From NCBI RefSeq assembly GCF_037042905.1, contig NC_087247.1:45756001-45820000 (forward strand): a stretch of DNA of 64,000 bases, written 5' to 3'. How positions within the stretch are numbered: position 1 is the stretch's first letter; each line of letters opens with the position of its first letter. Source of the stretch: Lytechinus pictus. Taxonomy: Eukaryota. Below the pieces are notes generated by a model. It saw only the letters and a list, made by a program, of their open reading frames with translations. It was not told the origin of the DNA and did not search any database. This document shows positions 28,803 to 62,871 of this stretch, one piece after another. Position numbers and translations under genes: made by a program.

Positions 28803-28826
28803 GGGGAATCCCCATTGGGTATCCCC
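28803..28826 (-). promoter_or_regulatory. Tandem NF-kB/Rel-type sites upstream of paralogue A
   Basis: GGGGAATCCCC (28803-28813; GGGGATTCCCC on the gene strand) plus kB-like GGGTATCCCC (28817-28826), ~190 bp upstream of the ATG. Confidence 0.6.
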
Positions 28827-29170
28827 GCTTCGAAAGTCTTAATTCTAAGGCTTGTTTGTAAGAATTCACGATAAGAGCGAGAGCTGAAAATTTTAGACAT
28901 TCAGACCAGAAAAATGAACATTTTAGGGACTGTTTTTAGGAATTAACAAAGAGCAGACATATCTCACCAATTCACTAGGGCGAACGTAAGCACGGACTGG
29001 AAGCATGTCACTACATAAAACAATAATAAGTGCGAGGAAATATTTTTGGTGTATATTGACTTGAAACGGATTTTTTTTAGTACAACAGGATTATATATCT
29101 CATTAAAAACAGACAATGCGAGCACCAGGAATGATGAACACACAGGCCCTATGTTTCATAAAGTTATGAA

Positions 29171-29357
29171 NNNNNNNNNNNNNNNNNNNNNNNNNNNNNN
29201 NNNNNNNNNNNNNNNNNNNNNNNNNNNNNNNNNNNNNNNNNNNNNNNNNNNNNNNNNNNNNNNNNNNNNNNNNNNNNNNNNNNNNNNNNNNNNNNNNNNN
29301 NNNNNNNNNNNNNNNNNNNNNNNNNNNNNNNNNNNNNNNNNNNNNNNNNNNNNNNNN
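29171..29357. other. Assembly gap
   Basis: Run of N. Confidence 1.
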
Positions 29358-30102
29358 TACAATAGACAAGTGACCTACCATTGTAAAGCTTAGAATCTCC
29401 TCTTTCATCTGAAACTACTTAGATTAATCCTCATTCACGCATGAGTGAGCAAAAACAATTTGAAGAAAGGATACCATAAACTCATTTGGCGGGGGGTATC
29501 TGAATTTCTAAAAGAAAATCACACGCCTCAAAAGTTCAATATCTGCTCTTTTATTTGATACCTTAATCACAGAAAATGGTCAAGAAGTAAAAAAGTTCTG
29601 TTCCATCGAAACAATGCTTGTATTTCCATAATTTCATTAAATAAACGTGTTTTCACCGGTTTCCCACAGAAGCTATCGCACGGTTAAACAAAAATGCATG
29701 GCTGATCGTCAACAAAACGGAGTGTCGAGTGACTCGGAACGCTAGCCTGTAAAACCTCTTCATTTTATGGAATTCAAGCTTTATTTCAAATAACCAGAAC
29801 TTTGTTATTTTTTGACAATTTTCTGTAATTGAGGTATCAAATTAAAAAGCAGATATTGAACTTTTTTTTAAATGTGGTTTTCTATTTGAAGCCCAGATAC
29901 AGCCCGCCAAGTGACTTTTTGGTATCCCCTCTTCAAATTGTTTTTGCTCACTCATGCGTGAATGAGAAATAATCTAAGTAATTTCAGATGAAAGAGGAGA
30001 TTCTAAGCTTTACAATGGTAGGTCACTTGTCTATTGTATTTGTGATTAAATTATGATAAATCATCGATAAATCTCGGTTTAGTTTTTTTCTGGGACGCAC
30101 TG
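29358..30102. mobile_element. Long-TIR Tc1/mariner-like MITE; left end lost in the gap
   Basis: Inverted arms of >200 bp (tacaatagacaagtgacctacc.. / ..ggtaggtcacttgtctattgta), ending cactg|ta. Confidence 0.75.
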
Positions 30103-30644
30103 TATATATATATTCCTTTACTACTTATTCTCTTTCTTTCTCCCTCTTTTTCTCCTTTCCCTCTTTTTTTGTCCAGCCGATAGGGGGAGGGGCACGTGCC
30201 CCTCGTAGTTAGGCCACTGAATTAAATGAATAGTGTAAATTGTGTGTATATCCTTGGCTCTCTGACCATGACGTATTGTGTAGAATTTGAGATAAAAGCT
30301 CTCGTAACTTTATTTTACATCCGATATTGATCTTGATCAGATTTTCAGTGTCCAAATCTTTTAATCTAGAACTATATCATAATTATCATACTGAATTCAT
30401 AAAACATGATAATTGCTTCCAAGCTTTTTATTTGAGCATAGAAACAAGCAGAGGGTTAGGTATTACTTCACACCATTGCATAAATGATACCACTTATAAA
30501 TATTAGCATAAAAACTTGCTTTGCTTTTGATTCGTCAAGGAACTGTAAGAATCAAACACTGACCATTTATCATGAATAGAATACCGAGATGTAAATCCGG
30601 AATTACCCTTCCGATCAGAGAGATGTCGCTATTGTTTTTTTTTT

Positions 30645-30897
30645 AAATAATATAGCACATATCCACCTTGTTAGGTGCTCAAGGCGCTCCTATATTACCC
30701 GGCTAAGCTAGGCGTTCATAGCGCACACAGCTTCTTGAGGAATAACTTCCTACCGGTACCCATTTACCTCACCTGGGTTGAGTGCAGCACATTGTGGATC
30801 AGTTTCTTGCTGAAGGAAATTACGCCATGGCTGGGATTCGAACCCACGACCCTCTGTTTCAAAGTCCGAAGACGAATCCACTGGGCCACAACGCTCC
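30645..30897 (-). mobile_element. tRNA-derived SINE, same family
   Basis: Reverse complement aligns with 103-393; intact B box gggttcgaatccc. Confidence 0.85.
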
Positions 30898-32251
30898 GCT
30901 TTTAATCAACAAACCCAACTAATGATTGGCGCTCGTGCGAACATAAGCAAAGTGCTATCTAACCCTAGTTACCCTCTTAATAAATATCTTATTTCTATGC
31001 ATTATTATTCAAGCAAATTCCAACAATAATGGCCAGGGAAAATAAAAGAAAAGGGAAAACGACAGAAAGGGCAAATTTTATGCATTTGGCCCTTTTTCAA
31101 GGCCTATAGTCCGTACATAATTAATCCTATAACATTCTCATAATCTTATTATAATAACACTATTTTAACATGGATGAACACCATCACGACATTGGTATTC
31201 GTGCAAATTACACATGTTGCGATTAACTTTTAAATCTACAAAATTGTAATCCCTGATTCGTTTCAAAGTAGTGTTCAAAATATCAATAAAAAATCTCAAA
31301 ACCTTTTGGTAAAGTACCAATAAACCCCGAGTTTTCAGTAAATTAGCACTACAAAATTACCATAAATTACAATGTAAAACAGCTGAAAATATTAAGTGCA
31401 GGAAATTTGAAAAAATAGGCTATAGTGAAATTTGTTTCATGCTATCTTAAATCAATATTAATTTTAAACTTTTCTTTCTCGTTATTGCATAAATTCAAAT
31501 ACAAGAGAGGTTCTTGTTGTTTGTTCCTTTTTCCTGGGTTTATATAGGCGTGACAGGAAGAAAGAGGCTGCGGACGTATAGCAATTGGTTCACACTCCTT
31601 TTGATGCTAATCTTTTGAAAATTTAACAATTTAAAGGGTCTTCATCATGGCCCTGGGAAGCGTACATTTTGGAGTGAAACCCTTTTTTTTGCTTGTCAAA
31701 TTTCTCATGACCAAAATGACCTTCATTTTGTCGTGAAACCTTTTTTTTGCTTGTCAAATTTACATCAGCATCCCCTGTAAAAAATAATGAAAATAAATAA
31801 ATCGGGACACAAAAGATACATACATGTATTCAATCAAAAGTACACATTGAAAGGAAAATATAGGTCGATATTCCATTTCCAGCTGTTGCTGCTTGTCTTT
31901 CATTAGCATTTGGGCAAGTCCTTGCGCGCTACTTGTCCGCCCGATATAGGGTTTGGAAAATAGACTAGGGCAATGTGCGTTAACAGGAGTGATGGCTGGA
32001 CCGCGCCTCGGATGCTAATCTATGTATTCAGACGCATTTTTTTTCAAATATCAGAGCCGAGTGCCTTGGCAAAAGGCTAGTCTTCCATGGGTTAGGGAAC
32101 AAAATGATATTTAATAAGACATTGTTATTGTTTACTACTTCGTCTTTGATATGTACATGTTCATTAAGATTTGAGAGATAGTAACATTTTTCATAATTAT
32201 GATTTAAGAGCAGTCAGTTGCGCAGTAGGCCTACAATACATTTCGGATTAA

Positions 32252-34743
32252 CTACATGCTGCACACATTGTTAATCAGAAGATAGATAAAGTAAGTTACT
32301 GCTACCATAATAACCCCAAATCCACATTTCGTTATGAGTTGAGATGCCTGATCTTTAATGTAACAATGGTATAATATGCTAATCAATGATATTATGAAGA
32401 TTGATACCCCAGCAGTCCCCAAACTACGGTACAGTTTGATAGTCAATACAACCACAAGGAACGTCCCTGCTAAGATTACCATCAATAGTTGCATCAGAAA
32501 CATTCTGAACAATCTGACGTGGCTGGCCCTCTTGGAAGCTTCTGCGGATGCTGACTGCATCTGACACTGTCTCACAAAGTCTTCAAGTTGTGTCCACTCT
32601 GCTTCATCCATGTCCACCTGGTTGTCCAATCTACCACAGACCAATAACTTATGAGGACAATCACCATGCTCATGATCAAAGGTTGAGGATAGTTTGCTCT
32701 GGAAGCTCTTCGTATAAGCACCCTTAATCGTAGCATGATCCTCCAGAGACGAGTCGGATGGTCCCATAGGGAAATCATGAACAATAATACAGACATTAGT
32801 TGCGCCTGCATACAGAATGTAAAAAAGTACAATTTCAACCAGGTTTGACTACTTGAAATAAAATGTAATACAGTATACCAATTCAAAATTATTCATCCAA
32901 GAATGGCTACTTCATCCATCTACCAGTCAAATAGTATACTAGTCAAAGATAAATTCATCGGTACTAATTTTTAGAAACATATAATTCTTTTTTAGAATCC
33001 CACAATTCATATCGATGACTTTTGTAACCGTCAACCTCCATACCCAAATTTATAATCCATCAAACGAGAGATGAAAGAGAAGGAGATCAGGGTACCAAAT
33101 ATAGATGAAAGACTTCTTAATTCGTTAACATACAGAAAACGACGCACATCCCCACACACCCCAACAATTTTTTTGCATTTTTTTTATTACCAGAGTTTTT
33201 CGTGAATGTGAGCAGGAACTTGTCGAATAGAATGTCCACAACATCATCCACTGCTAAGTGACAAGTGCTGACAGAATGACAGACTATTACACCATCAAAT
33301 CCTGAAAGATGATCGAATCCAAGATCATTGTCAGGCAGTTCTATAACGTCTACATTGGTCAGACTTGAAACCTTGGTTATGAAATGTTTTATTTTAGACC
33401 TTACTGACTAACAGACGGCTATGATTGTACCTGGTGCCATGGCGCATCATCTGGACACAGAAAACACAATGAAGATCATTCATTTTGTGGAATTTCGATA
33501 AAAAATCAAATTACTAACAAAAGCTAAGTTTGAATACAATGTTGACCTACAAAATAACAGAAATGCATCTTCTTAAAGCTCACAAAGAAACAAGATTAGA
33601 TTCGATCCGTACAATTGCCTTTTGGTGCATTTATAAATATATACTTATAAAAAATAACACAGGAAAAGATTGTCGAGAATTTGATTTGGAATATTTTTTT
33701 GAAGAAGAAATATGTAAACACGTGTAATGTGATTTTAAATGTTCAATTATGAAATATAATACATTCCCATGGTGGGTTTAAGGATAAAAAAAAAATTACT
33801 AATAAGACATTAAGAATTTAAAAAGGTGTCTACTAGATCCTTTAATTTTGATTTAAAAGTACAACAAAAATCCCCCGGAGTCAGCTCATTGTACGTGTGT
33901 ATAGTTATTTATTCCACGCGTTTAGGCCCATCAATCAGATATGATTATGTACACCCATCTGGGAATGACGCTTAACTTCACCATGCGAAAGACATAACCA
34001 TGGTAACCGGGGCTTGAAAATTGAACCTATATGCAATTCGGTAACCCCTTCCCCCCCATGACGCTTGATTACCCAGTGAAAAAAATCACCCCCACATGCA
34101 ATTAAGTCAATGTCCGATTTTTTTTAACGTATTGATTCACAACAAAGTCGTGTTTTGTTGATATCTTGTTACCTGTCACGTCATGCAACCATAATTTTTT
34201 TACTGAAATTCCTACACGATTATAGATATTTTGATGCATTTGATCAAAACCAGATGAGTGAACAAAAGTGCTATAATAGGTATAGAAATCGAGCAACAGG
34301 TCACATCATTCACGTTCTGGCACATATATATGGATTACAGTCAAAGAATAATTGTCTCATGGCCGCATGTATTATTGTTTACCCAAATATTTCAAACTTT
34401 AATAGATCACACATTTCATATGTGATTCAAATTAAAACTCAGAGTATGAAATACGGATTTTACACCGGTGAAAATGTGAGTGGAATGATCAAATTACGTT
34501 TAAAGTTTATTCTAAAATGAAACAATTCTCATTATGTGAAATATGTAATGAATTCCAATTCACAGTAGATGAGATAAAAATGAGGCTAATTTAACTAGCC
34601 TCATTATTAATAACAACCAATTAGTCAACAAATCGATAACATTGTGTCATAAGCAAAAGTTGAAGTAGGTACAGGTTCCATCATGATGACATTTCTGTAT
34701 TTACAACCTAATATTGATAGAAATATTGTTCTGTACTTACCAT
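32252..34743 (-). pseudogene. Paralogue B of the same family, probably disrupted
   Basis: ATG|gtaagt at 34743-34741. Exon 2 (33450-33191) reads MAPGTIIAVC*SVRSKIKHFITKV..DGVIVCHSVSTCHLAVDDVVDILFDKF, with an in-frame TAG at 33410-33408, and the exon-1 ATG is out of frame with it. Exon 3 (32805-32252) is open: GATNVCIIVHDFPMG.. plus 3 TM segments. Confidence 0.75.
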
Positions 34744-37159: not shown

Positions 37160-40100
37160 ATATTCATTATCAGGTTCCGGTTGTAGGATTTCAATTCTCC
37201 AATCATCACCTCCATCATCATTGTCATCATTGTCATCATTTTCATCATCATCATCATAATCACCAACAGCAAATTCGATTTCACATTCATCCTTTATTAG
37301 TTTTTTAAACTTCATCCTCTCTTCATCTCATCACCATTACTACCACCATCTTGCTGTTATGACACAGAAAATTTACACACAAATCACATATCATACCAAT
37401 AATCTTAATTTTTTTGGTAATATCAAATTATCCTCCTGAGTAATGACATGGACATTTTTTCTATTTTCAATACAAACAATATATCATCTGATAATAACTA
37501 TTACTCAACCGAAGATTTTACTTCTAGATTTAGAGACATGGAACATAAATTCAGTTTGCTTCATATTAATGCTCGTAGTTTGAATAAAAATTTTGAGTCA
37601 TTGGAATCATTACTTTTCACTTTAAACAATTTCAAATTTTCCATTATTGGTGTCACGGAAACATGGCTTCACAATACTTCACCTAACATATTCAGTTTGG
37701 AAAACTATAATCTCATTAGGCGTGACCGGGAAGATCAAAGAGGAGGAGGTGTAGCATTTTACATCAGTGAACATTTATAATTCAAAGTAAGGAAAGAAAT
37801 ATCATTAAAACAGAGTGAAACTTTATTCATAGAAATCACGAAGCCAAAAAGCAAAACTATAATTATTGGATTGATTTATAGACCCCCTCATGATAAAGTA
37901 AATTTATTTTGTGAAGACCTTGAAACGTGCTTTCATACTATTAGAAAAGAAGAGAAACAAATATATTTAATGGGTGATTTTAACATCAACCTGTTATCCC
38001 AAAATAATGAACATGATTTATTCCTACACACAATGCATTCATTTGGCGATTATCCCCATATAGATAAACCGACCAGAATTGATAGCCATTCATCAACACT
38101 TATCGACAACATTTTTTCAAATATATTAAACAGAGATATTACCAGCGGATTGTTAATATCTGATATATCGGATAATTTGCCGGTTTTTTCATTTTGCGAT
38201 AATGATATTCCAAAAGAAAATATACTCAAATCGACAATGTATAGAAAATAACATTGAATCGTTTAAAAGGGATCTTGCTATTGAAGAATGGTTGGATGTA
38301 TTTCATGAGTCTAATTTAAACATTGCATACACAAATTTTAACAATAAATTGCAGACATTTTACGAGAAAATTTTTCCTCTGATACCACTGGTCAAAAGAA
38401 CGAAGGCAAAAATGCCATGGATTTCTAAAGCAATTTTAAGATCCATACGTACCCGAAAACAAAAATAAATACAAAACTTACAGAAATAGACTAACCAATA
38501 CAATTCGAGCTTCTCGCAAATTATTTTATTCCGAGAAGCTTTACAAAGTCAAATCAAACATGAAAGCAACATGGGAGATTATAAATGATTTGATTGGCAA
38601 GAAACCCAAAATATTACCCAAAGATAATTTCACAGCTCATGATGTTGCGATAAATTCAGAAGATGTAGCTGATACCTTTAATTCCTTTTTTGTTAACTTA
38701 GGACCCTCATTGGCAAACAAACTTGACAGAACTGATGAAAATTTTGGAAAATTTCTTCCCACACCCATTAACTCTTCTTTATTCTTTAACCCAACAAATG
38801 TTCAGGAATTAATTGAAATAACAAAAAATCTCAAATCAAGCAAATCACAGGGAATTGATAGAATTGGTACTTTCCTTCTTAAGCAGATCATACACTATAT
38901 TGCCTCTCCTTTGTGTCATATTTTTAATCTGTCGATTAGCACCGGAATATGTCCTGATTCCCTAAAAATTGCAAAGGTAAATCCTGTTTTAAAAAAGACA
39001 ATCCGCATGAAATAACAAATTACAGGCCTATTTCTATTCTTCCCAGCATTTCCAAAATATTAGAGAAGATTATTTACAATAGACTTTATAAGTTTCTAGA
39101 TACTTTTCATTTTCTAAATTCTAACCAATATGGATTCAGGAAAGGACATTCGACTGATCAGGCTTTAATACAAATATACGATAAAATCACAAATGCAATG
39201 ACAAAAAAAGAACATATAATAGGCGTATTCATGGACTTAAGCAAAGCCTTTGACACTCTTGACCACCAGATATTACTTAAAAAACTTGAAAATTTTGGAA
39301 TTCGCGGAATTACACTATCTTGGTTTAAGAGTTATTTGTCCAATAGAAAACAATATGTAATTCACAATAATATTCCTTCTGATTTTCAGTTAATACAATG
39401 CGGAGTTCCACAAGGATCAATCCTAGGCCCCTTGCTTTTTTTAAAATATATATCAATGATTTGACTTCTGTAACACCTTTATTATCATATGTATTATTTG
39501 CAGATGACACCAACATTTTTTGTTCACATAATAGCTTAGAAACTTTAGTAGATATAATTAACCGTGAATTACCAAAACTATCTTTGTGGTTTAAGTGTAA
39601 TAAGCTTTCACTCAACATAGATAGAACAAACTTTATATATTTCAAGCATACACACTCACATGATAACGAATTTCCTTACAATATAAACATAGACAATACT
39701 CCTCTCAAAAGGAAAAGAGAAACAAAGTTTTTAGGTGTCACAATAGATGAAAATTTAAATTGGAATGAACATGTACGTTGTATAACTACTAGTATTTCTA
39801 GAAACGTTGGTATACTTTACAAAATGAAAAACATAATTCCACATACAACTCTTGTCATACTCTACAATTCATTAATATTGTCTTATATATCATATTGCAA
39901 CATAGTTTGGGCAACATGTGCAAAAACTAAAATTAATACAATATACTTATTACAGAAAAAAGCAATTCGAATCTGTACTGATTCCCAATATTTATCACAC
40001 ACAAATCCATTATTCCATAAACTAAAGACTCTAACAGTATTTGACATAAATACTCTTCAAAATTTACTACTTATGTTTAATTACGTAAATAACATGCTCC

Positions 40101-40802
40101 CACCTTCATTCCACAATTTTTATACTCTGAATACATCTATTCATTCTTACCCTACCCGTAACTCTTCATATTTCCATTTAATCAACCCTAAATTGCTTAT
40201 TGCGCAGAGATCCATAAGACACCATGGTCCAGATTTGTGGAACTCTCTACCAGAGCCTGTAAAACAATCTTCGTCTCTTCACTCATTTAAGGCAAACGTT
40301 AAATCTATGTTATTATCAGAATATTTGAAGTAAAATTTCTGTGTCATATCCTTTTTATCGTGAATTTATTCCTCCTTCGATTTAGTCATTACCAATATCT
40401 TCATCATGACCACCATCATCTCCATGGCCTTCATCATAATCATCATCATCAACATCATCATATCACCGTCACCCTCAGTTTTATCATCTTCATCTTCATA
40501 CTATAATATTGCATGAAGTCATGTTTCGTATTTGAAAATGTATGCCCATTCTGCTTTATAAATGTATTAATTTATTCAATTAGTATAAGTTTGGGATTGT
40601 AATTTTTTTCAAGCAATCTGTTTATGATGACAATCCTTCTCCTGCAAATTGTGAATATCATATAGTTAATCATTTTTGTCTGAAATTATCTTTTTAATAC
40701 TCTTTATTTATGATTCATGCCAAAAATGCTAGCATATTATGTTATGAAAAATGTATTATACGAATGTTATGGATGCAGAAGAAAACAATAAATCAAATCA
40801 AA
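37160..40802 (+). mobile_element. Non-LTR retrotransposon (CR1/L2-group LINE); near-complete but disrupted APE+RT ORF2 at 37448-40333
   Basis: APE motifs HINARSL, GVTETWL, GGGVAFY, IYRPP, GDFNINLL, PTRI..LIDNIF, SDN (normally SDH). RT motifs DLSKAFD, GVPQGSILGPLLF, YIND, FADDT. A stop at 37778-37780 and several frameshifts. 3' tail aataaatcaaatcaaa. The 5' boundary is approximate. Confidence 0.9.
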
Positions 40803-41502: not shown

Positions 41503-42894
41503 CTACGTAATCTTGATGGGAAACCCTGAAATGTTGCGACAAGACTGAGGCCACCATTCTTTCCAATCCGGCAGGATTGGTTTGTTGATCTTTCCCGCTC
41601 TTGCTGCTTTTTCGTCATCTAATAGTCTACTGACGACCTGGCACATATTCTGAGGCATAAAAAGCCATGATTCGTTTGTGAATTCGACGGATCCTTGTTT
41701 CTTCCATTCAAAGAACTTATTGTAGAGATTGTCATTCTGATCAAGAATGGTTACATAGTCCGCAAGATCTTGGATCGTTTCGAAGTCCTCGACATGGATG
41801 AATGAATCCGGTGGAACGACTGCCTCGTAGTCCGCTCGAGGAGGTCCAAACACAATAGGGACTAGGTCGTTTTTGAAGGCATTATTCCACAGTTTTTCGG
41901 TGATGTAGTCTCGACAAGCGCAGTTTTCTAAAGCGAGATAGAACTTGAACTGTCGTAGTACACCATTGCATGTTTCGGAGAAGTTATCTACACGTGGAGG
42001 ACAAGCTCCTTGCTCCCCGCACTTGCCGTACATGCCCACGTCAAGATATTTGGATAGCTCTTTGACAAACCCAGTCCTATTCCAATGCAGATAGATGGAC
42101 TGACAGTTAGAGGACAACCATGCGACCTGTCGTTTCCGACCAGCAGCCCAATTCCTTGTTTCGTTTGAACTAATCGATGGTTTACTGGTGTCATAGTAAG
42201 CAAAGCTAGCATATAAGTGGGACTCCCTGAAACGGTATGACATTATGTAATCATAAGCGCTGTTGATATAGTCTTTGGGTGGAAGGACTCCTTTTTGTGT
42301 ATTTAGTGGACTTTCGTGGGAGTAAAATATCAATTTTTGTCCTTTACGTTTATGACTCAATATTTTAGTCCAATTCCAGAGTGTCCTGGGTAAGAGCAAG
42401 ACGGCATCACTATCTTTTAATGTCTCATAATTGGCGTCGATCACCAAATTGATACCGCATGCTAGTCCTGGACAGGGCTCGATTCCACGTTGTCGGTGTT
42501 CAGTTCCCCATATTTGGACTTGTTTAACACAATGAGGTCTAGGAAGAGCTTCACGAATCACAAGTTTGGTGTCAATCAACTTTTGTTGACCACCGTCTTC
42601 TGAAGACCTGGTATTCGGTTGGATCAAAGAGGCCGGTTGGTCTACACAAAATTTGAGCTCAGATTTATACCCTTCTTGTTCCCTTTCATGTGCTCCCCTC
42701 TCTTGCATTATCCTCAAAATATCTCCGTAATCTTGAAGGAGCCTAGTACATTCCTCTTTGCTAACAAGACGAACCTTTGATCGATCACTCCCACTGGAAG
42801 ATCCTCTGATCCAATGGCAATGGTAGGAGATCCAGCAGAATGCTAAGATACCCCAAGATGTAATGACATAGAGTAAGAGACGCTTGGGGGACAT
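41503..42894 (-). CDS. Alpha-1,3/4-fucosyltransferase (CAZy GT10), type II membrane protein, 463 aa, single coding exon
   Basis: N-terminal TM (LLLYVITSWGILAFCWI) and stem, then GT10 motifs: HESP, MSYR, VAWLSSNC, FKFYLALENCACRDYITEKLWNN, VPIVFG, PPDSFIHVEDF, YNKFFEW. Acceptor tttcag| at 42907/42906 just before ATG 42894; candidate 5' UTR donor at 48837/48836. Confidence 0.93.
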   Translation of the reverse strand: MSPKRLLLYVITSWGILAFCWISYHCHWIRGSSSGSDRSKVRLVSKEECTRLLQDYGDILRIMQERGAHEREQEGYKSELKFCVDQPASLIQPNTRSSEDGGQQKLIDTKLVIREALPRPHCVKQVQIWGTEHRQRGIEPCPGLACGINLVIDANYETLKDSDAVLLLPRTLWNWTKILSHKRKGQKLIFYSHESPLNTQKGVLPPKDYINSAYDYIMSYRFRESHLYASFAYYDTSKPSISSNETRNWAAGRKRQVAWLSSNCQSIYLHWNRTGFVKELSKYLDVGMYGKCGEQGACPPRVDNFSETCNGVLRQFKFYLALENCACRDYITEKLWNNAFKNDLVPIVFGPPRADYEAVVPPDSFIHVEDFETIQDLADYVTILDQNDNLYNKFFEWKKQGSVEFTNESWLFMPQNMCQVVSRLLDDEKAARAGKINKPILPDWKEWWPQSCRNISGFPIKIT

Positions 42895-44035
42895 TGTAGA
42901 TAAAACCTGAAAATATAAAAAGTGAAGAGTATAATTCTGGATAAACGCACTAAAAGACTGAAGTTTTTTGGCAAACATCTGTGGTGGCCATGTAATGTCA
43001 GATGGACTCGAACGGGTTGTGTTTTCAATACAACCTCAAAACACTATAACGACCAAAAAAATATTCTAAGATGTCATTTTTAAAGATGTTAAAGCATTCG
43101 TTCCTATTTGATATTACTTCTTTAAAGTTCAATTTGTTGCCATTTATCTTGATACCTATAATGCTATCCCAAAATCGCTTTAATTTATTCATTTTTTTCT
43201 ACTAACAGATTACATAAATATAACTAATGTAAAAAATAAGCCCTTTTGTAATGTAGACCTATAATCTTTGATTATGTTGAGTGAATGAGCATTGCCTTGA
43301 AAAAAGGCAAATTAACTCATATTCAATGGCGAGGGGAGGCATGTTACTCCCAAAGTCTCTGTCGAGTGTCGAACATATTTTTTTTAGTCCATACCTAAAA
43401 GGACATACGTGACTGTATTTTCAATGTACGTTGGACTTCTGTTCTGTATGAAATTGATTTCGAAAAATTATCTGTACATATTTTAAAGATCTTCACTTTG
43501 GTCACTTCGTCGTACACATAATGATTAACTACCACATAAATCTTGAAAGAGATGGAACATGTAAATGTTTATACTCTTAGTGCATCTGCAGCATGAGGTA
43601 GCTATGAACTACGAAACACTTTGACCTCTCGCAATTCTTGAACAGTGACGCCCCTGACCTTTAAACTGTATTATTGGCAGACATTCAAGGGCCACAAGCA
43701 CCAGACATTTTAAACAAGTTACTCCAATTTACACTTTCATGAAAGGGGAATGGGAAAAGAAGGGCCTGTTAATGATATAAAGGCACTAAATCTATTCCAA
43801 CACCTTGCACTCCAAATAAATATAACAGTTTCTGATACCTTATTGTTTCTAATGTTTAATAGGTTTTTTTCGTTGTACACATTGTGGCGAATTTCTTCTT
43901 CTTTTGTGACGGGGATGAAAATAAAATCCTCAACAGCGCAGTTCCAACCGCTTGCCTTACATTTCAGAGAATTTGAGAGATTTAAATAGGTGTCACGAGT
44001 TTGTATTTGTTGTATACTATCAACATTCTCAATAT

Positions 44036-45681: not shown

Positions 45682-45927
45682 CATACAGTTTGTTTTATCT
45701 ACATTATTTATATTCAGTGAGAGCAAAGCCTTCTAGTCCTTGGCATCGTTTGCGGGATGTTTACATGATCTTATTGCCTGAGAGTCCTTTCAACATTCCC
45801 AGCTAAGGTCAGACTTTATAACCTGGACCGCGCTCGTGAAGAGCACTGTCCTTCGCTTACGTAACAGCGAGGATAGTCTCCCAGTCGCGTGCGACCTCGC
45901 CAAGCGATGACAGATCTCTGTCGCGTG

Positions 45928-51143: not shown

Positions 51144-51949
51144 ATATATATATATATATATACTGGTTCGGCTTAATGAGATAATATGCAAATTTACTTT
51201 GTTAATAAGAATAATTTATTGTACCATTGTATGGCTTTTTATACAAGCGATGCTATATGGTATATAGGTTAATCAACTAATCATTTTGATTACATACATT
51301 AAGGCAAATACGTAACTTTCAAATATACATAGAATGTAAGAAATTAATTGTCATGGAAATTCCCTTAACATTATCAGTTAACGTATTTTCAAACTTCTTG
51401 AATTAAGATTGGCAACATATAAATTTCACATATGCTAATAGATAGGCGAATTGAGCTAATGAAAAATGTTATCCAATGATAGTTGCAGCACTTAGTTGAA
51501 TGCGATAATATACCATAAAACACATGTCCCTCCATCCTAGGTTGCCGATCAAGCAACCGATCTGTTTACCATAGAACGCAAGTCCCTATATATATCCCCG
51601 CAAAAAATTAAACTTTCACAAATTTTCCGAGCATAAAATCTAATATCTCATCTATTATTATAATTTACAACTTCAAAGTTTATCAGTATGAAGACGGAGA
51701 ATCATTCTTTCAAAATATGGTAATTTTCTAACATTTTAAAGACAACATTATTATTCAGTCAATTGCAGAAAACTTATCCTATAGCTACATTTGGTCATGG
51801 GGTGTCAGGTAACATATTCCCCTGTAATTCAATATAGAAACAAAATTTAAGCCGTCTTGCCCTCCTCCTCCTCAAAATATCTTGGCGTCGCTTCCGATGA
51901 TGAAACATGATGTTAGTTGTCTGTATTTGTCTTTCATATTTGAAAGGGC

Positions 51950-51959
51950 GGGATTCCCC
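51950..51959 (+). promoter_or_regulatory. NF-kB/Rel-type site upstream of paralogue C
   Basis: GGGATTCCCC ~135 bp before ATG 52094. A second site, GGAAATTCCC (= GGGAATTTCC on -), is at 51355-51364. Confidence 0.6.
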
Positions 51960-52093
51960 CTCTCGACATCGACCATCTTTGAGTGCGCCACAAAATTAAT
52001 GACTGACAAGGCACTATTATTATCTGCGTTGTTTTGTTTGTGTTTGTGTGCAGACTGTTGGCAGATTCGAAGGAAATAATATTGTCGGAAGAT

Positions 52094-55000
52094 ATGGACG
52101 AGGTGAAGATTTGATTTCTTTTCTCCTTTGCTCTGTTTTTAAATTGTTTTAATATAACTACTGTTCACGAGTGTTTATCTCAAGTCATGTATGCGAATGT
52201 ACGCTTACTGACTCGACTCTCCGAACACCACATTGTTGGAATGTTGGCCTACATGTTGTATGCACTAGAATTTGCTATATCAAAGTGCAGGTGCTCGACA
52301 AATAATACTCCACCAATAATGCACATTGTTATCTTAACATAATAAGCCTTCATGTTGTCGCGTATGCTGGGCTTGATCAACCCCTTTCAAAATGAAACCA
52401 GGGAATCGTATGCTATAATAAAATGATATCTAGGCCTGCATAATCACGATGTACTATATCTAGATTTTTATCTGTATTTCGAATAGAGCAAAGTGAGGTT
52501 TTTGACGATCAAGCCCGCACAAAAAGGGGTAAATTGTAGGTTTAGGGACTACATGATATAATATAATACACACACCTTTTACACCCCCCCCCTTACACCC
52601 TCGCACCCCAAGCACCAAGACATTGCATGTATGCATTATAACAGACATTCATCAAGATCATCATGTTCGAATGCAGGTACAGAATTAAGAAAGAAGATGA
52701 GTATTGAAAGCAGAGAATAGAAGAGAATATAAGGGAAAATTGAGGACACGCCACAGAAGGGTTTGGCGTAATAATGATTATCCGTTAATAATAAAACAAT
52801 GAGTTTGGGTCGGAATGTTGTAACCTACATTATCATGAGTACGTCTACGTAAAGAGAGAAGAGAAACAAAGATGACATGCAGCATATGAGATCTACACCG
52901 TCAATCTGTACCATTTCCAAAAAATCTGTTGATTTTTTCCCGAACTATGCAAAGTTTGGGAACTGAATCGTTTAATTCTATACATTATTCTCATTTTTTA
53001 ATAGAATATCAGTCAAGGTGTGAGGGAGAATGTGACAGTTGGCATCTGTACGTCAGCGTTGGAGTCCAATATCGAGGCTCTTTTAAACAAAGTCAAAAGT
53101 CTCCCAAATGTAGCAGTTAAATTTATTCAGCTACCATACAATGATCTAGACAGCTTTCGGCTTTCAAGTGAAGGACTTGATGGTGTGATCATCTGTCATT
53201 CTATCAACAATCGTCGTTTTGCAATCACAGATGTAAGAGATGCACTCTATGACAAGTTCTTGCCTCATGTGAAAGAAGTGTTTGGTAAGGGAAAAAGTCA
53301 ACATACTTTTCTTATCTGAATGGGATTTATTTATTTATTTTTATTTTATTTTTGTTTTATTTTTATTTTTTATCTATTTATTAATTAGTTTATTAATCAA
53401 TTAATTAATTTATTTTATTTATTTATTTATTTTTGTTGTTTTTTTTTTGGGGGGGGTGGACATTTAAGAAATAAAAACGAGATCAAACATATTAGAGTGC
53501 ACATACGAATTTACGTATATGACCACTGTGACCCCATATACAAAATCTAATCAGATCATCTTCACTCCTATAATACTTGGACCAAGTTTGAAGTTGATCC
53601 AGCAACGACATTAGTTTATATTGCGAGAACGGGACAGGTGGATGGACGACCTGGAAACATCATGTTTCCAACATGAATCTAAATGATATAGGGAGGTTTA
53701 TATGATGTTTAAGGCTTAGTGTATATGGCCTGATAACCACACGTGTCCAACAAGTTCAGAAATGCAAACTATATGGCGTAATATATAAATATGCTACCCT
53801 AAATGTCGGGAGAAAAGCAACCCCTATATAATTATACACAACAAAAAAAGTAAGTCCCCCTAAATCAATTTGCTGTAACTTTTGAACGGAATTAATTTGA
53901 GATATGATATTTCGTAGGTGGTTTTATGCACTCATTAAGCAACTCCTGGGGAAAAATGAGATTGATCAATTGAGTCATGCATGAGTAATTAAAGATTGAA
54001 TTAAAAATGACAATTTTTGAAAGTCAAAAGAGTCGTTTTTCAAATTGTGCAAATACAAATTTGGGCAAATATTGTTTTTAGGTGAAATTTATGGTGTTAA
54101 TGCTGTTGTACTATCCATCATTTAGACACTCCACACACAATTTTGATATCGTATGTTCATGGTTGAGTGAGCACAATATTGCAGGGGCCGCGGAAGCGGG
54201 GGGGGGGGGGGCTCAGCCCCCCACTTTTTTCCAAAAGCATGTACAAAAATGTAAAAATGACCACACGATTGTGAGTTTTTGCATGGTCAGCCCCCCCCCC
54301 CCACTTTGAAAACTGTTCCGCGGCCCCTGTATTGTGACGTATCATCATAGGGGTTTATGGTAGTATCCTCTACAACTTGTTAGATCATGTTAAAATTTGA
54401 AAATGTTGGTGGCTCCCCCAATTATACGCCCCTCTCCCATTTTAAAATTCTGGATCCACCACTGACTTGTCCATGAATTAAACTGATCATGAGAGATTGT
54501 TAGGAAAAGAATACTTTAATGCAGTAAAAAAAGTATTCATTCCTAAGTTTTCGAATGTGCTCGCTCAACCATGAAAAGGTTCAAAGTTCGGAAAGTGTGT
54601 GGTGATAGAAATGATGGATGATAAAAACAATAGCAATTAAATTCACATTTGAAACCGAAATTGCCCCCCCCCCCAATATTCACTTTATTACCCTTTAAAA
54701 TGAGGCTGTGACATTGAAAATACCAATTTTCCCACTTTGATGCGTGCTCACTCATCCATAAATAAACAAATCGATTTCATTTTTGCACAGAATTCTGCCC
54801 ATAGGTTGATAAAGATTACTGCCAAAGGACATTGCTAAAGACAGCCTTGAAAATATGTTCCCTCATATTGAATAAGGGGTTACTTATTCTTAAACATATG
54901 CACCCATAATGTACACAAGTCTATGAGAGAGGAAGTCAAAATTTTAACAAATATGAGGGTTTGTTTCATGGACGGTTTTTGTTACTTCTGCCAACAGTTA

Positions 55001-58000
55001 TTTCATGAAACTTCGCACATGGCTTCAGCCGGGCTTCAGAGTAACACTATCCAAAAGGCGCGCACACCAAAATAACCATTCGATACGGCACAGAATGGGG
55101 CCAATGCCTTGAACTTTCTTCTCATTTGCATAATTTTCGAACATTGTGTGCTCACTGAGGCATTTAACATCGGGATTTTCATAAAAATCAAATCAAATGA
55201 ACCATGCAAGGAGGTTTGTGACTGATTTCCATAGTTGCAAATTGCACTTTTGCCAATAACGTGAAAAAGAGCTAATCACATTCCACATGTTCATTCAAGT
55301 GTGACTGTTTAATTAAACGCCTTTGAATCATTAAAGCATGTTAATTGGTCATGAACATAACGAAAAAGTTGAGAAAAAATCATTTTCAGTTACCAAAATG
55401 AAACAATACTTGCCTATGATATTTGAAAATCGTATATTTTGTTTTCAATAAATGTTCATTGAACCGTGAAACAATGAATATTGTCGAAGATACTCTTCCC
55501 AAAAATAACTGTCATCATATTCTATCATTTTTATTTTATTTTATTTTTTTCAATTTTTTCCCCCTTCCACAGGGTTCTTTATTTTCAAAAAGGTATAGTT
55601 ACATGGTATAAACATTTACAATTTTCCGACAAACATTAAATAAACATGGTATATACATAATTCATAATAATAATACATATACATGTAGTCAAACTGACTT
55701 ATTGTACAATCAAGTTGTCACAGCCAAAGCAAATTTGGCAAGAAAAAGGGGTCTGATACATATTACTAAGAAATAAACACTGGTAATAATTATGTTAATG
55801 TGACAGATTGCCAGCTTGTTCGAAAAAGTTTCTGAAATGAAACCATTTATTTCTGAACTTATTTGCTCTGATATTTGTTTCATAAATATATTTTTCCATT
55901 TCATAATAAAATTTTAAAGCCGACATAATTGAGGTAAATAAAGGTAACTCTTTTTTCAATTTGGCTAAGTATATCTCTTTTCTTACGATCATCATGACAC
56001 AGTTAAGAGCATTATTATTTGTACCACAAAATCCAAACAATTTGTTTTCATTCGTTAATACGATCACCTCTCGAGTATTTTGAAATATCCATGATTCTAT
56101 TCTCGACCATATTACATTAGAGTGAGTACAAAGGCAAAATATATGCATAATTGTTTCATCATTATCAATACAAAAAGTACATTTCATATTTGTTATTGTA
56201 CCAAATTTCAACAGAGAATCTTTCATATACAATATTTTGTTTAAAATTTTAATTTGAAACCATCTTAAGTTTATATCCATTGTTGCCTGAAAAGGAATCA
56301 AACAGAAAGCAACCCAAAGGTCATCTCGAAAACCTAACAGATCTTTCCAGCTGACAAGAGCCTTACATTCTTCAACTTTAAAGTTAAGAAAAGAGCGATA
56401 TATATTTGAGCAACCTACACGTGTTTTCACAAGGTGCAGAGCTTCAGGAATGATTGGTTCAATAGATTTAGTAATTATATGCGAATCTGTGGGAAAACCA
56501 GACCTAATTGCGTCACAAAGACCGTAATACTGTAGAAAATTGGTTTGTATACCATAAGCACGTTGGAATTCAAAGTATGGAAAGAAGGTACCATCTGTTC
56601 TAAGAATGTCATTAACAAAATGTTTTCCTCGTAAATCCCAAGACCTGAAATAGACTGGTTTGTTATTTATTTTTATTCGATGATTATTCCAGAGAGGCTG
56701 ACAGGCTATGTCATCAGTTAACAATTCAAGCAAGTCTGAGTAAGCAAGTAAAACTTCTTTCCAAAATGGATTGTAATTCGTGTCTGCCAATGTTCTGTTA
56801 TAATGTGAGCCCATGTACAAGTGAAACTTGTGTGTTGGATTTAAGAAAACATTGAACATATGAAAAGTAAAACTGTTTTGAGAATCATTTAAAAAATCGT
56901 CTTATCCATGAAATCTTCAGAGATTTAGCATGTATGAAAATATCTATCATTTTTTATTGATAGAAATGTATTAAAAAAATCAAATTATAGCAAATTTGGA
57001 CTTGTGTTTATTCAACCGTGAAATTTAGCCAAAAAAAATTGTATCGTCTTTTAGAATGTACCTTTTACAAGCCTTCTGACTATTTTTCATGATGAGAATG
57101 TGGAATTAGTTCCAATAAAATGGAATCAAAGTCATGATATTTGGCTTGTGACTTTTGAAAAGTGACATTTTTGCCTTCTGATGGTGCTCACTGAAGCATG
57201 ACGTAAAATACGTCCATAACATTTACTCAGAGGGTACCTTATAAAATTACCTACACGCTCATGTAAACTCGCATTGGTTCGGAAATTATTGATGTTTGTT
57301 TAAGGGGGGACTTACTTTTTTGTTGTGTATAGTTGCGCAAACATTGAAATCTAAATCCTGTAAACGAACATTATGTTAAAATGCAACCCTAAATGGCATA
57401 ATCTGCATAACCAAATAAGCAAAGCTAAATGCCGTGATTTTGTGAAAAATGGCTACCCTAAGTGGCGTTGTCATGACAGCGAATGGTGCTGAAAATCAGC
57501 CAGTTCGAAAAATACGTCGACGAATCCTTGATAGATCGGGACCCTTTCTGGCGCCTTTTAAACATTAATAAGTTTTGCTCTTTTCAACGGTGCCGTTATT
57601 GTTACGTTAAATCTCATGTTTGAGTAAGAATTGCCATGAGAGTAAGAGGTACAAAATTCTAATTTTACTTCTCATTGTTATATATACTGAATTCCAGGAA
57701 AAGACAACGTCTGTGTTATTGCACATGACTTTCCATGGCCAATGGGACCAAGAGCCGATGATCATGCTATGATCAAAGGAACCTACATGGATCGCTTTCG
57801 GAGCAAACAATTCACAACCTTCGAGTGTTCCAAACTGGCCATCATCAGTGGTAAGCTGGACACTCAGATGGACATGGATCAAGAGGATTTGGAACAGTTT
57901 CAAGAATTCATCTATCAATGTTGGACCCATCCACCATATCATCACATGTCCCACAATATTCCACCGCCTAATCCTGACCCCAATAATTATGTTAAGTTGA

Positions 58001-58620: not shown

Positions 58621-60678
58621 GGACTATGAAATTGCTGTCGTGTTTATGGATAAAGATCATGGGAATATTCTTACAAAAGATCACAAATATGAGATATGAA
58701 ACATGAACATAATTTATGTCACATGACATTATGGGGGTGGGGTTACTGGCATGTGACGTCACAAAATTGAAATTTTACGGCTTGTACCAGCTAATAATGT
58801 CCCTCGTATGGGCCACACAATGATGAACCAATTCAAGTTTTATAAAGTTTACATAATTTAGAAAGCTCAAAATCTTACAGATATCGCTTCACTTTTTTTT
58901 CTTTACAAGCCCTTATCATGTTCCTGTAGCGGCAGTATTTTACACTACATTCTAAGTTTGATAATGGGAAATGCACACGGAGGGACACAGAATTTGCATT
59001 CTTTTTAATTACTTTTTTTTCTATCAGGGTCAAGTTAGGAATAAAAAGTCCTATTTATTGGTAATGTTCACTTTCATCAAGAGTAATACACTTTAGGTTT
59101 TTCCTTCATTTTCCAAGTTTGTACTCCTGCACCATACTTCTCTTTTAATTGGTGCACTGATTCCTTTATCAGATATCAATAATGAAATAACGCTTCTCGC
59201 ATGAACATTCTCAAATTCGTGATTGGACGAGCTCGGTCAGATTAGGAAAATTAGCTATATAGTTTTATAAATTTGATTTGATTCTGAAATTAATTCAGCC
59301 GTCTGTCAGATTTGGCATAATACGAAATTGAAATATCGTTTCCACAGCAAACTTTTGTAACATTTAAGCAGGAATGAGTTGAGTGTATGTTTAATTGTGT
59401 TCAAAGAAAACTGTTTTTATATCATGAAGGGAGTTTTGATTTCAATTTATTAGATAACAATCAATTAAATAATACATGTGAAATCAACAAATGAAAACTT
59501 GAGGAAAGCCTTACTCAGCTGCGTCAATATCAAGGTGAATGCTGCATGGTCTACCAAGCTTGGACTGTGCTCTTACTAGAGTTCACTTTGTCTAACCCAA
59601 AGATAATAATTTTGAAAGATTCGTGATCACCCCAAAATGAGAAATCGACTGTCTTGGTGACAAAGTGAAAAAAGGTTAACACACTGGTTTAAATGAATAT
59701 TAATTTGTGATCGTAAGGTGTCGCAGGAAGCAGGATTATGATCATGCAATGCTCATTAATGTTGTTGCATATACCAGGGCCCGTTTCATAAATCTCGACT
59801 GTGTGTTATGATAACATGTTTGCAATAACATTTTAAAGCTGCTGAAATCACTCAATTGATTAGTTGATCTTAACTTGTCATAGAAGCATGTTTCATTACA
59901 ATACGTTTTTGTGAAACTGTACATTAGAATTTAAACGTATGTTTTTTTTTTTGTTTTTACAACTGCCCGGATTTGCAGTGTAACTACTTTTTCCATCTTA
60001 CTCAGACATTCAAAATGCAAAATGTAAATTGTTTCTCTTTACTTGTGACATTAAATGAAACATGAGGTTGATTTGATCTAAAATTGTGATATTGTGATTA
60101 TTATACGTAGTAGAGTATTAATATTATTAGTACATGTTAATTATTGTCAATCAATATACCTCTATTATCAATGAGTCAGGCAAAGGTTTTAACCAAACTA
60201 TGTGACATGTGACTTTAATGTGCACTCTCCCTATTTTGTATTGGGAGTGGAGTGACAGCCTCTTTGATTAAAAAAAGAGAAATCAATAAGAAAAAGAAAT
60301 ATAAAAAAAAAGAAGAAAAAAGGGTCCGAGATCATCGAGATGTGTTACTCTCGTGTATCCCCATGATTAATTATAATCATGGACCTATGAAAAGATGGAC
60401 GACTAACGCGAGCATTTCTTTGATCCAATGATAGTCACCGTCACCTGGTTATGCGCATCTTAATGAGAACATATACAGGTGTTGTAACAATATAGCAATT
60501 ACCATGACTGTTAAAGTTTCCCGGTCTTGATTTTTGTAGGCTGATACCCTGTTTCAGCATGTGCCTTTCAGTCAACATGCTTCATATATGGAGCAGCAAA
60601 CTTGAGGAGCAGACGATTTATATTATATAAAATATGATATTATTCGATCCGCTAACTACCGCTCACACATAAGGACCT

Positions 60679-60841
60679 AATTAGAAAGTCAAAAAGGGGC
60701 CTAAGCTTTCGATCCTAGCAGAATTGGATTCTGCTAGGATCTTTCTGCTAGGATCGAAAGCTTAGGCCCCTTTTTGACTTTCTAATTTACTCCATTGGCT
60801 CTCTTTTATTAGATAAGCAGTTTTTAGCAGCTTCTTTTTGC
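60679..60841. mobile_element. Short fold-back insertion with a 13-bp TSD (Penelope-like end)
   Basis: cacataaggacct is duplicated at 60666-60678 and 60842-60854; inside is a ~45-bp perfect inverted repeat. Confidence 0.65.
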
Positions 60842-61617
60842 CACATAAGGACCTCAATAACATTGAGAGATACGCGATCTATACATGTTATGTGCCACGT
60901 ATAATTATGTGGAATATTATGGAGAAAATTGGGAAAATTGAATTTAAATGGTAAACAATCAATCACAATATTGCCTCTATATTAAAATATGCAGACATTT
61001 CCACAAATAAAACACATGGAACTAAGATTACCAAAGGTAAACGGTAAACAAAAACTGCACATCGATTTTCCATTATTTCATTGATTTGTTATTAACTGCG
61101 CATATAATATTTGTGAAATATAAATGTCCAATCACGAACTGCTTCAGTCCCTTCTCACGGTGACGATCATATAGGACCAAAGAACACTAGTATGAAGAGA
61201 ATGTTATTCAGATAACAATTACAGTCACCTGTTAGTGAATTCATTATCTAAGTGATGAATGTCCATCTCTTCATAGGTCCATGTTCTAATTAAGAAAAAT
61301 TGCGCCACCGTTGATTCCATATCTTAATACCTTGCCAATATCCTTGTAACTGTACAACCGCGCCCTACATGGCCGTATTACCATCAGGTTGAAACTAAAT
61401 TTGCCATGAAACTTTCCACGAAATTTCGACTAAGAAGAATATTCTTATTTGAATTTCATATATAAAACAAAAAGTATGCCCCCGCAGCCCACAAAAGGCC
61501 CCACGGAAAGAAATTAGAGAAAGAAGGGAAAAACGAAAGAAACGAAAAAAAAAAGCGTTACAAATGATGCTATTATATGAGTAATATGTCAACATTTATC
61601 ACAGAATTAGGTTGTCA

Positions 61618-62390
61618 TTTTTATCTCGCCTGTATAGCACAGCGAGACAAAAGGCGCCGCTTTTCCGACGGCTGCGGCGGCGGCGTCTACATTGAAATCT
61701 TAACCTAAGAAATGACATCATAACTTAATAAGTAATGTATATAGACCTAGTTCATGAAACTTAAACATAAGCGTAATCAAGTGTTACTGAACATTCTGTT
61801 TGAGTTTCAGGTCACATGATCAAGGTCAAATCTCATTTAGGCTCAATGAACTTAGACCATGTTAGGGGAATCAACATCGAAATCTTAACCTAAGTTTAAG
61901 TTTTTGAAATGTGATCAGAACTTAGAAAGTTTATAGATCTAGTTCATAAAACATGGACATAGAGTAATCAAGTATCACTTAACATTCCGTGCGATTTTTA
62001 GGTCACATGACCATGGTCGAAGGTCATTTATGATAAATGAACTTTGGTCATTTTAGGGGGTAATTGTTGAATTGCCATCATAACTTTAAAAGTTCATTTA
62101 TCTACTTCATAAAACTTAGACATAAGAGTAATCAAGTATATTTGAACATCCTGTGCGAGTTTCAGGCCACATGACCAAAATACAAGGTCATTTAAGGTCA
62201 ATGAACTTTTGCCATTTTAGGGGTAATTGTTTAATTACCATCATAACTATGGAAGTTTATGGACATACTTCATGAAATGTGCACATAGGGGTGATCAAGT
62301 ATCACTGATCATCTTCCACAAGTCGTAGGTCACATGACCAAGGTCAAATGTCACTTAGGGTCAATGAACGTAGTATAACAGTATTATTTC
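61618..62390 (+). repeat. Helentron/HINE-like element with ~120-bp tandem subrepeats
   Basis: ttttt-atctcgcc head with a short stem and (cgg)n, then repeated ttcatgaaact..aatcaagt..aggtcacatgacca.ggtcaaaggtca units. Confidence 0.6.
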
Positions 62391-62860
62391 CTTTTTTTCG
62401 GGGGGGGGGTCCCAAACAACCTTTGCTTTTAATAAAAAAATGCCTATTTGGTAAAATGGCCTTTTACGGATTAAAGTAATTGTATTTCCATGCTTGGCCA
62501 CCTCTTGATCAGTGCGGGGGGGGGGGGCAAGATAAAGGATTAATTTGATTTTCGTATTATCCCTCTTTTTTCTTCTTTTTTTTTCTTTCTGTATTATATT
62601 TCTTAACTTTTCTTTCAGTGAAGAGAACGTAGGAATAGACTAAAATATAGTTGAAGTGATTTATGAATCTTATGTACATGTTAATATGTTTTTGTTCTGT
62701 GATTTTACTGAAAACTTGATGTATTGTAGATGTTGATGTTATGGGAATAATCAATAAACGAATACTTTAGAACAACAGCAACAACATTTTTAGGGAAGCC
62801 ACTGAAGTCAGATGTTAGATGTTTCGCCTTTTTCTTAGACTGAACCAAGACTATGCCAAC

Positions 62861-62871
62861 GGGGATTCCCC
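62861..62871 (+). promoter_or_regulatory. NF-kB/Rel-type site upstream of paralogue D
   Basis: GGGGATTCCCC 120 bp before the exon-1 donor, followed by TGACCTCG as in the copy A promoter. Confidence 0.6.

What the first reader, a model, noticed from the sequence alone, without database searches (positions are those of the whole stretch)
28803..62871. The same NF-kB site sits in the same orientation just upstream of all three intact paralogues
Seen: gene-strand GGGATTCCCC at 28813-28803 (A), 51950-51959 (C) and 62861-62871 (D), ~120-190 bp from the exon-1 end, in promoters that otherwise barely align. Short co-conserved downstream words are TGACCTCG (A, D) and GACATCGA (A, C). Extra kB-like sites are at 28817 and 51355. 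I saw no such site in front of disrupted copy B. Established: this fits the Rel/NF-kB consensus GGGRNWYYCC. Inference: the family is pathogen- or stress-inducible.
Basis: partly seen in the sequence, partly recalled or inferred. Interest (0 to 1): 0.8.

Follow-up and report, generated by a model that had tools for sequence, protein, structure and literature searches.

The report
Conserved NF-kB site before urchin genes
An 11-letter palindrome identical to a classic NF-kB binding site lies in front of many members of an unstudied sea-urchin gene family in four urchin species while the DNA around it has diverged, so it is probably a working switch, possibly for immune induction.

Summary
GGGATTCCCC occurs three times in the window (0.05 expected). 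Each copy lies on the gene strand, 120-190 bp upstream of the proposed exon-1 ends of paralogues A, C and D. Their promoters show no BLASTN similarity to each other.

The real unit is the 11-bp palindrome GGGGAWTCCCC, so "same orientation" rests on the central base only.

The site is family-wide. The exact 10-mer lies upstream of 12 of 23 Lytechinus pictus paralogues sampled (about 0.013 expected per region). It also lies upstream of family genes in S. purpuratus, L. variegatus and two Diadema species. The flanks are unconserved. In half of the 24 family-linked sites a strong splice donor follows 96-200 nt downstream. Pseudogene B has lost the site.

The sequence equals the mammalian MHC class I kB site, which the p50 homodimer binds over 11 bp. 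L. pictus encodes an NF-kB whose recognition loop keeps all four p50 base-contacting residues.

Not shown: binding, induction by pathogens, or the exact transcription start. RNA contigs hint that the start lies between site and donor. NCBI's model of gene C would make its site intronic.

The family is echinoid-only, has at least 42 copies, matches no Pfam family, and has a G-domain-like N-terminal fold.

Earlier notes of this scan mention kB-like sites in other promoters of this genome.

The parts
28803..28813 (-). kB-type 11-mer GGGGATTCCCC of paralogue A (LOC129256279), 190 nt upstream of the exon-1 donor
28817..28826 (-). Degenerate second kB-like word GGGGATACCC, 3 nt upstream of A's site. 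It misses the strict consensus by one base.
28783..28800 (-). Co-motifs TGACCTCG (28800-28793) and GACATCGA (28790-28783). Together they give the shared core GACMTCG.
28613..28730 (-). Exon 1 of A. The 3' end is firm: ATG at 28615-28613, then GTGAGT. The 5' end is not mapped; contigs of run X15 cover only the 28578-28730 bin.
26900..27186 (-). Exon 2 of A, encoding the conserved N-terminal half-domain
   Evidence: Joint 26263/26900 in RNA-like contigs; acceptor at 27186
25489..26263 (-). Last coding exon of A (rest of the domain plus transmembrane helices). Transcript contigs continue to at least 24600.
51949..51959 (+). kB site of paralogue C, CGGGATTCCCC (exact 10-mer; the 11-mer has one mismatch)
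51965..51972 (+). GACATCGA co-motif of C
51797..51808 (+). Alternative first coding exon end used by NCBI's model of C (ATGGGGTGTCAG then GT). It lies upstream of the kB site.
52094..52102 (+). It is in frame with exon 2 at 53005 and resembles D's exon-1 end.
51355..51364 (-). Extra consensus kB word GGGAATTTCC, about 600 bp upstream of C's site
62861..62871 (+). kB-type 11-mer GGGGATTCCCC of paralogue D, 120 nt upstream of the exon-1 donor at 62991/62992
62883..62890 (+). TGACCTCG co-motif of D
62847..62853 (+). AAGACTA word upstream of D's site. It is also seen upstream of the site in A (AAGACT) and in S. purpuratus and Diadema family genes.
32252..33425 (-). Disrupted copy B (exon-2 remnant 33207-33425 with a TAG; last exon 32252-32767). 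No kB site and no promoter similarity upstream.
29171..29357 (.). Assembly gap, 358 nt upstream of A's site. It is not part of the element.

Best explanation
GGGGAWTCCCC is a functional cis-regulatory element shared by an echinoid-specific multigene family. It lies about 100-200 bp upstream of the donor of a short first exon. It is most likely bound by a Rel-homology dimer, and the best fit is a homodimer of the urchin p50/p105-type NF-kB, with each subunit reading one GGGGA half-site across an 11-bp span. That would place the whole family under one NF-kB-dependent control.

Shown: the element, its retention against randomised flanks in four species, its position relative to exon 1, and a matching factor in the genome.

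Inferred: which protein binds it, and that the output is induction on infection or stress. Neighbouring conserved words (GACMTCG, AGACTAA) suggest that co-factors act with it.
For: Window: three exact copies against 0.05 expected.

Genome: 1303 10-mers and 772 11-mers in 812 Mb, against 377 and 176 for the reversed controls. 59% of the 10-mers carry the extra 5' G.

Family in L. pictus: 12 of 23 paralogue upstream regions (8.3 kb each) carry the exact 10-mer, and 11 carry the 11-mer. About 0.008-0.013 is expected per region, giving a binomial P near 1e-17. Three more regions carry GGGAATTCCC or GGGAAATCCC.

Other species: the site is upstream of family genes in S. purpuratus (-591, -206, -271), L. 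variegatus (-1303), Diadema setosum (-200; 10-mer at -4045) and D. antillarum (10-mer at -4655).

Flanks: unconserved (mean 0.2 bits per position), and A, C and D promoters are not alignable.

Position: GTRAGT follows 96-200 nt downstream in 12 of 24 sites (P near 1e-9).

Pseudogene B lacks the site.

Literature: the sequence equals the MHC class I kB site (PMC9991059). The p50 homodimer prefers 11-bp spacing and contacts the G bases through Arg54, Arg56, Glu60 and His64 (PMC10527052).

Factor: the L. pictus gene at C18:12.08 Mb encodes RFRYGCEGPSHGG, with all four residues in place. A Rel-type gene lies on C7.
Against: There are no binding, accessibility or challenge-expression data.

The transcription start is not mapped. 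NCBI's model of gene C places its first exon upstream of the site.

Eight of the 23 L. pictus paralogue regions show no comparable kB-type palindrome (no GGGGAWTCCCC, GGGAATTCCC or GGGAAATCCC) within 8.3 kb; five of them have no match to GGGRNWYYCC at all.

Gene A is barely expressed in the two raw RNA runs examined.

In mammals, p50 homodimers on this site can repress or stay inactive without a co-activator (PMC9991059 shows the analogous inactivity for p52:Bcl3 on the MHC site). The sign of regulation is therefore open.

Paralogues share ancestry, so the binomial P overstates independence.
Confidence: 0.65

Rival explanations
1. The element is functional, but it is read by another factor with kB-like specificity. 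Candidates are a HIVEP/Schnurri-type ZAS zinc-finger protein, an NFAT-type or Rel-type dimer, or an urchin-specific factor. It need not be tied to immunity.
For: Only sequence evidence links the site to NF-kB. The genome has three RHD loci, including a Rel-type and a weaker, probably NFAT-like, one. The 11-mer is over-represented genome-wide, so it may serve many kinds of gene. That ZAS zinc fingers bind GGGGATTCCCC is from my own knowledge and was not checked here.
Against: Two 5-bp GGGGA half-sites with one free central base are what the p50 loop reads, and that loop is intact in L. pictus (PMC10527052). Variants seen in other paralogues (GGGAATTCCC, GGGAAATCCC) also stay within kB space.
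Confidence: 0.15
2. It is an NF-kB site, but it sets constitutive, tissue-specific or repressed expression rather than pathogen or stress inducibility.
For: Perfectly symmetric p50/p52-type sites can be bound tightly yet be transcriptionally inactive in mammals (PMC9991059). RNA-like contigs from two unrelated studies already hold gene A's exons.
Against: The gene family looks like an immune effector family: lineage-specific, at least 42 clustered copies, fast-diverging C-termini and pseudogenes. A review reports that urchin NF-kB transcripts rise after bacterial challenge (PMC11359984).
Confidence: 0.15
3. The shared word is only inherited from the ancestral promoter or spread by gene conversion, and has no function.
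Against: The flanks are randomised. The word survives in paralogues whose proteins are only 40-54% identical, and in four species of three genera. The pseudogene lacks it.
Confidence: 0.03
4. The palindrome acts as a small GGGG/CCCC hairpin in the 5' UTR RNA, not as a DNA site.
For: It is a perfect 4-5 bp inverted repeat. The transcription start is unmapped, and run X1 has an uninterpreted contig in the bin that contains the site.
Against: Contigs of run X15 stop short of the site. RNA-like runs hold only 13-27% of the words between site and donor. Both central bases occur, and loop-less variants such as GGGAATTCCC replace it in some paralogues.
Confidence: 0.02

Closest known systems
MHC class I (H-2K) kB enhancer site GGGGATTCCCC, bound by NF-kB p50 or p52 homodimers (PDB 1SVC, 1A3Q)
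   Same: The 11-bp sequence is identical: two GGGGA half-sites around a central A/T (PMC9991059, PMC10527052). The urchin NF-kB keeps the Arg, Arg, Glu and His contacts.
   Different: Here it lies in promoters of an echinoid-only orphan gene family. Binding and activity are untested. Which dimer binds, and with which co-factor, is unknown.
kB sites in promoters of invertebrate immune effector genes (for example Drosophila antimicrobial peptide genes, regulated by Dif/Relish)
   Same: A Rel-family site is shared by a battery of lineage-specific, clustered genes, close to the start of transcription.
   Different: The comparison rests on my own knowledge. Insect sites are asymmetric (GGGRAYYYYY type). 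This one is a strict p50-type palindrome conserved to the base across genera.
GIMAP/AIG1, GBP and Rho-type G domains (for the encoded protein)
   Same: The predicted N-terminal alpha/beta fold of P0001 (residues about 11-175, pLDDT mostly above 85) is closest to these.
   Different: There is no Pfam match and no PDB sequence match. The P-loop position reads CSSASKSN or CTSALKSN instead of GxxxxGK[ST].

Membership tests
Rel/NF-kB (kB) DNA site | Matches the consensus GGGRNWYYCC | tested here: met
   all three window sites match on both strands
Rel/NF-kB (kB) DNA site | p50-type architecture: two 5-bp GGGGA half-sites with 11-bp spacing | tested here: met
   A and D, and 9 further L. pictus paralogues, carry GGGGAWTCCCC. 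C has one 5-bp and one 4-bp half-site. Reference sequence from PMC9991059 and PMC10527052.
Rel/NF-kB (kB) DNA site | A cognate RHD factor with intact base-contacting residues exists in the organism | tested here: met
   the C18 locus encodes RFRYGCEGPSHGG; the C7 locus encodes a Rel-type loop
Rel/NF-kB (kB) DNA site | Retained beyond neutral expectation in paralogous and orthologous promoters | tested here: met
Rel/NF-kB (kB) DNA site | Lies upstream of, and close to, the transcription start | tested here: inconclusive
   A donor follows 96-200 nt downstream in 12 of 24 sites. RNA contigs suggest the start lies between site and donor. NCBI's model of gene C disagrees.
Rel/NF-kB (kB) DNA site | Physically bound by NF-kB/Rel (EMSA, ChIP) | not testable with these tools
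   none
Rel/NF-kB (kB) DNA site | Confers stimulus-dependent transcription | not testable with these tools
   The one read-laying run showed only low basal expression of gene A.
P-loop GTPase (for the encoded protein) | G-domain-like alpha/beta fold | tested here: met
   (Foldseek probability 0.97-1.0, TM by target about 0.5 to Rho/Rac/Cdc42; GBP and GIMAP7 are also hit)
P-loop GTPase (for the encoded protein) | Walker A / G1 motif GxxxxGK[ST] | tested here: not met
   Sequences. Nearly invariant C18 and S20 occupy the loop, and there is no glycine pair.

The most novel reading that the evidence does not exclude
The family is a previously unrecognised echinoid immune-effector family. Its members are membrane-anchored proteins with a degenerate G-domain-like head, and they form a core NF-kB regulon. 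The strict 11-mer GGGGAWTCCCC (772 copies, 4.4 times its reversed control) would then mark that regulon genome-wide. That would give a sequence-level map of NF-kB targets in a non-chordate deuterostome.
Probability: 0.35. Interest if true: 0.65.

Novelty: new member of a known kind. Interest (0 to 1): 0.5.

Why it matters
Echinoderm immunity is known mostly from receptor and effector gene inventories. Very few cis-regulatory links between NF-kB and its target genes have been defined.

This element is base-perfect and deeply conserved. It sits in front of a large orphan family in a species where stable transgenesis exists (L. pictus; PMC11361634). That gives ready-made reporter constructs, a candidate NF-kB regulon, and a reason to study what the encoded G-domain-like membrane proteins do.

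It also suggests that the p50-type homodimer binding mode is used natively in a non-chordate deuterostome.

Tried and rejected
- Chance was rejected by shuffles and whole-genome counts.
- A repeat or transposon origin was rejected because the flanks differ between paralogues.
- MAFFT alignment of the three promoters did not even put C's site in register.
- Transcription start mapping failed. The single read-laying run showed too few raw reads on gene A, and the contig pieces around exon 1 were ambiguous. A word-share query of the site-to-donor interval gave only 2-4 of 15 words.
Whether known immune-induced genes carry the 11-mer is therefore untested.
- Pfam, PDB sequence search and the ESM Atlas gave no name for the protein.
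- Literature searches for the LOC identifiers, and for kB sites in urchin promoters, found nothing specific.
- P0005 and P0029 (L. variegatus) were not on record for locus retrieval.
Full report
**Observation.** The 10-mer GGGATTCCCC occurs exactly three times in the window: 28803-28812 (-), 51950-51959 (+) and 62862-62871 (+). Dinucleotide-preserving shuffles expect 0.05 copies. The looser consensus GGGRNWYYCC gives 16 matches against 2.4 expected, and most of these are the same three palindromic places counted on both strands.

Reading the sequence shows that A and D carry the 11-mer GGGGATTCCCC. C carries CGGGATTCCCC.

For A that donor is corroborated. The NCBI protein for this gene (LOC129256279 of Lytechinus pictus, P0001) starts MIMANP. 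This needs the ATG at 28615-28613 spliced to 27186.

The extra word at 28817 misses the strict consensus by one base; the one at 51355 fits.

The assembly gap (29171-29357) lies 358 nt upstream of A's site. It plays no part in the claim, and I did not test continuity across it.

**The unit is an 11-bp palindrome.** GGGGATTCCCC and its complement GGGGAATCCCC differ only at the centre, so "same orientation" depends on one base.

Genome-wide (812 Mb) there are 1303 copies of the 10-mer and 772 of GGGGAWTCCCC. The reversed controls give 377 and 176. 59% of the 10-mers carry the extra 5' G, where about 18% would be expected from base composition. The genome therefore favours the full palindrome.

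**The site is a family trait, not a local accident.** The N-terminal exon of P0001 matches 42 places in the genome. Two of these are further close paralogues (E and F) just beyond the window.

I fetched 8.3 kb upstream of 20 of them. Nine carry the exact 10-mer, all as the full 11-mer. It lies about 1-2.4 kb before exon 2, and once 7.1 kb, with either central base. Three more carry GGGAATTCCC pairs or GGGAAATCCC.

With A, C and D this makes 12 of 23 regions, against about 0.013 expected per region (binomial P near 1e-17). The paralogues are not independent, so that figure overstates significance.

The same element lies upstream of family genes in four other species:
- Strongylocentrotus purpuratus: -591, -206 and -271 from the coding start, plus a further tandem copy.
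- L. variegatus: -1303.
- Diadema setosum: -200; a 10-mer at -4045.
- D. antillarum: a 10-mer at -4655.

From my own knowledge, Diadema separated from camarodont urchins more than 200 million years ago.

**Only the 11 bp are kept.** BLASTN with word size 7 finds no similarity among the A, C and D promoters; only the recent duplicates E and F align. Across 16 non-redundant family sites the flanking columns carry about 0.2 bits each.

The disrupted copy B has no site with up to 2 mismatches in 9 kb upstream, and no trace of a promoter.

**Position.** In 12 of 24 family-linked sites a consensus donor GTRAGT follows 96-200 nt downstream (about 0.05 expected per site). This fits a short first exon that starts just after the site.

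RNA evidence is thin. Contigs of two RNA-like studies confirm the exon 2 to exon 3 splice of A. One run (X15) covers the 28578-28730 bin but not the bin holding the site. RNA-like runs hold only 13-27% of the words between site and donor. This suggests a start inside that interval, with the site at roughly -70 to -150, but it is not proof.

One conflict remains. NCBI's model of gene C (P0013) uses a first exon that ends at 51808, upstream of the site.

**Who binds.** GGGGATTCCCC is the mammalian MHC class I kB site (PMC9991059). The p50 homodimer prefers 11-bp spacing and reads the three outer G bases through Arg54, Arg56 and His64, with Glu60 on the paired C (PMC10527052).

L. pictus has three Rel-homology loci. 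The one on C18 encodes RFRYGCEGPSHGG, which keeps all four residues at identical spacing. The one on C7 has a Rel-type loop, RFRYPVEGRQAGS.

A p50-type homodimer reading two GGGGA half-sites is therefore the most economical reading. DNA-binding specificity of NF-kB is reported as conserved between a cnidarian and human (PMC3630861, abstract). A review reports that urchin NF-kB transcripts rise after bacterial challenge (PMC11359984). None of this shows binding or inducibility at these genes.

**Neighbouring words.** TGACCTCG and GACATCGA share the core GACMTCG. It lies downstream of the site in A, C, D and one S. purpuratus gene. It lies upstream, in the same orientation, in E, F, their L. variegatus orthologue and another S. 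purpuratus gene.

AGACTAA-like words lie 7-25 nt upstream of the site in Lytechinus, Strongylocentrotus and Diadema members.

Genome-wide, TGACCT within 25 nt of the 11-mer occurs 43 times. My rough expectation is about 15, and the reversed control gives 0. I cannot name the factors involved.

**The genes.** The family is found only in echinoids, and every member is annotated as uncharacterised. It has no Pfam or PDB sequence match.

AlphaFold2 models residues about 11-175 confidently as an alpha/beta fold. The closest structures are Rho-type, GBP and GIMAP G domains and flavodoxin. Transmembrane-like helices follow. The canonical P-loop is absent.

Large copy number, clustering, variable C-termini and pseudogenes are typical of immune effector families. 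That is resemblance, not evidence.

**Verdict.** The NF-kB reading is well founded at the sequence level. Inducibility is untested. It is a new member of a known kind of element, attached to an unknown gene family.

Noticed in passing
whole genome G000: GGGGAWTCCCC occurs 772 times against 176 for its reversed control, and 59% of GGGATTCCCC copies carry the extra 5' G. The full palindrome is favoured genome-wide. Some copies have identical flanks, for example three on C8, so other gene families or repeats may carry it.
   Followed up: partly
G000 C3:44840378, C12:28988074, C15:12912352, C15:29148600, C20:3280501, C2:21513689: The 11-mer directly abuts TGACCT (0-1 nt apart) at six places unrelated to this family. 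This may be a composite element used elsewhere.
   Followed up: no
window 17666-17676: GGGGACTCCCC is a second perfect half-site palindrome, with a central C. It lies far from the family genes, in a region where an ORF at 8745-9104 looked to me like part of another gene.
   Followed up: no
window 27737-27774 (intron 1 of gene A): About 1000 RNA reads per run match only this 38-nt stretch and run on into unrelated sequence on both sides. An abundant RNA encoded elsewhere shares this short segment.
   Followed up: no
window 51797-51808 versus 52094-52102: There are two candidate first exons for gene C, both in frame with exon 2 at 53005. NCBI's model uses the upstream one; the downstream one resembles D's exon-1 end.
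   Followed up: partly
window 41503-42978 (-): An intronless 491-aa ORF with a family-10 fucosyltransferase domain (Pfam E = 3e-54) lies between copies B and C.
   Followed up: no
window 37448-40333 (+) and 55795-56859 (-): Long ORFs that I judged by eye to be LINE or reverse-transcriptase fragments (not checked against Pfam). The first lies upstream of pseudogene B, the second inside gene C's large intron.
   Followed up: no
L062 (G000 C7:44062252-44062392): The Rel-type RHD gene reads RFRYPVEGRQAGS. A Val stands where, from my own knowledge, vertebrate Rel proteins have the redox-sensitive Cys of RFRYxCEG.
   Followed up: no
AlphaFold DB hits of model m5ca697ac57b0: One structural relative of the N-terminal domain is a 542-aa entry named AIG1-type G domain protein (its residues 3-143 match). 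Another, A0A081K8W7, has an accession unlike the urchin series. These hint at fusion to GIMAP-type GTPases and at relatives outside echinoids.
   Followed up: no
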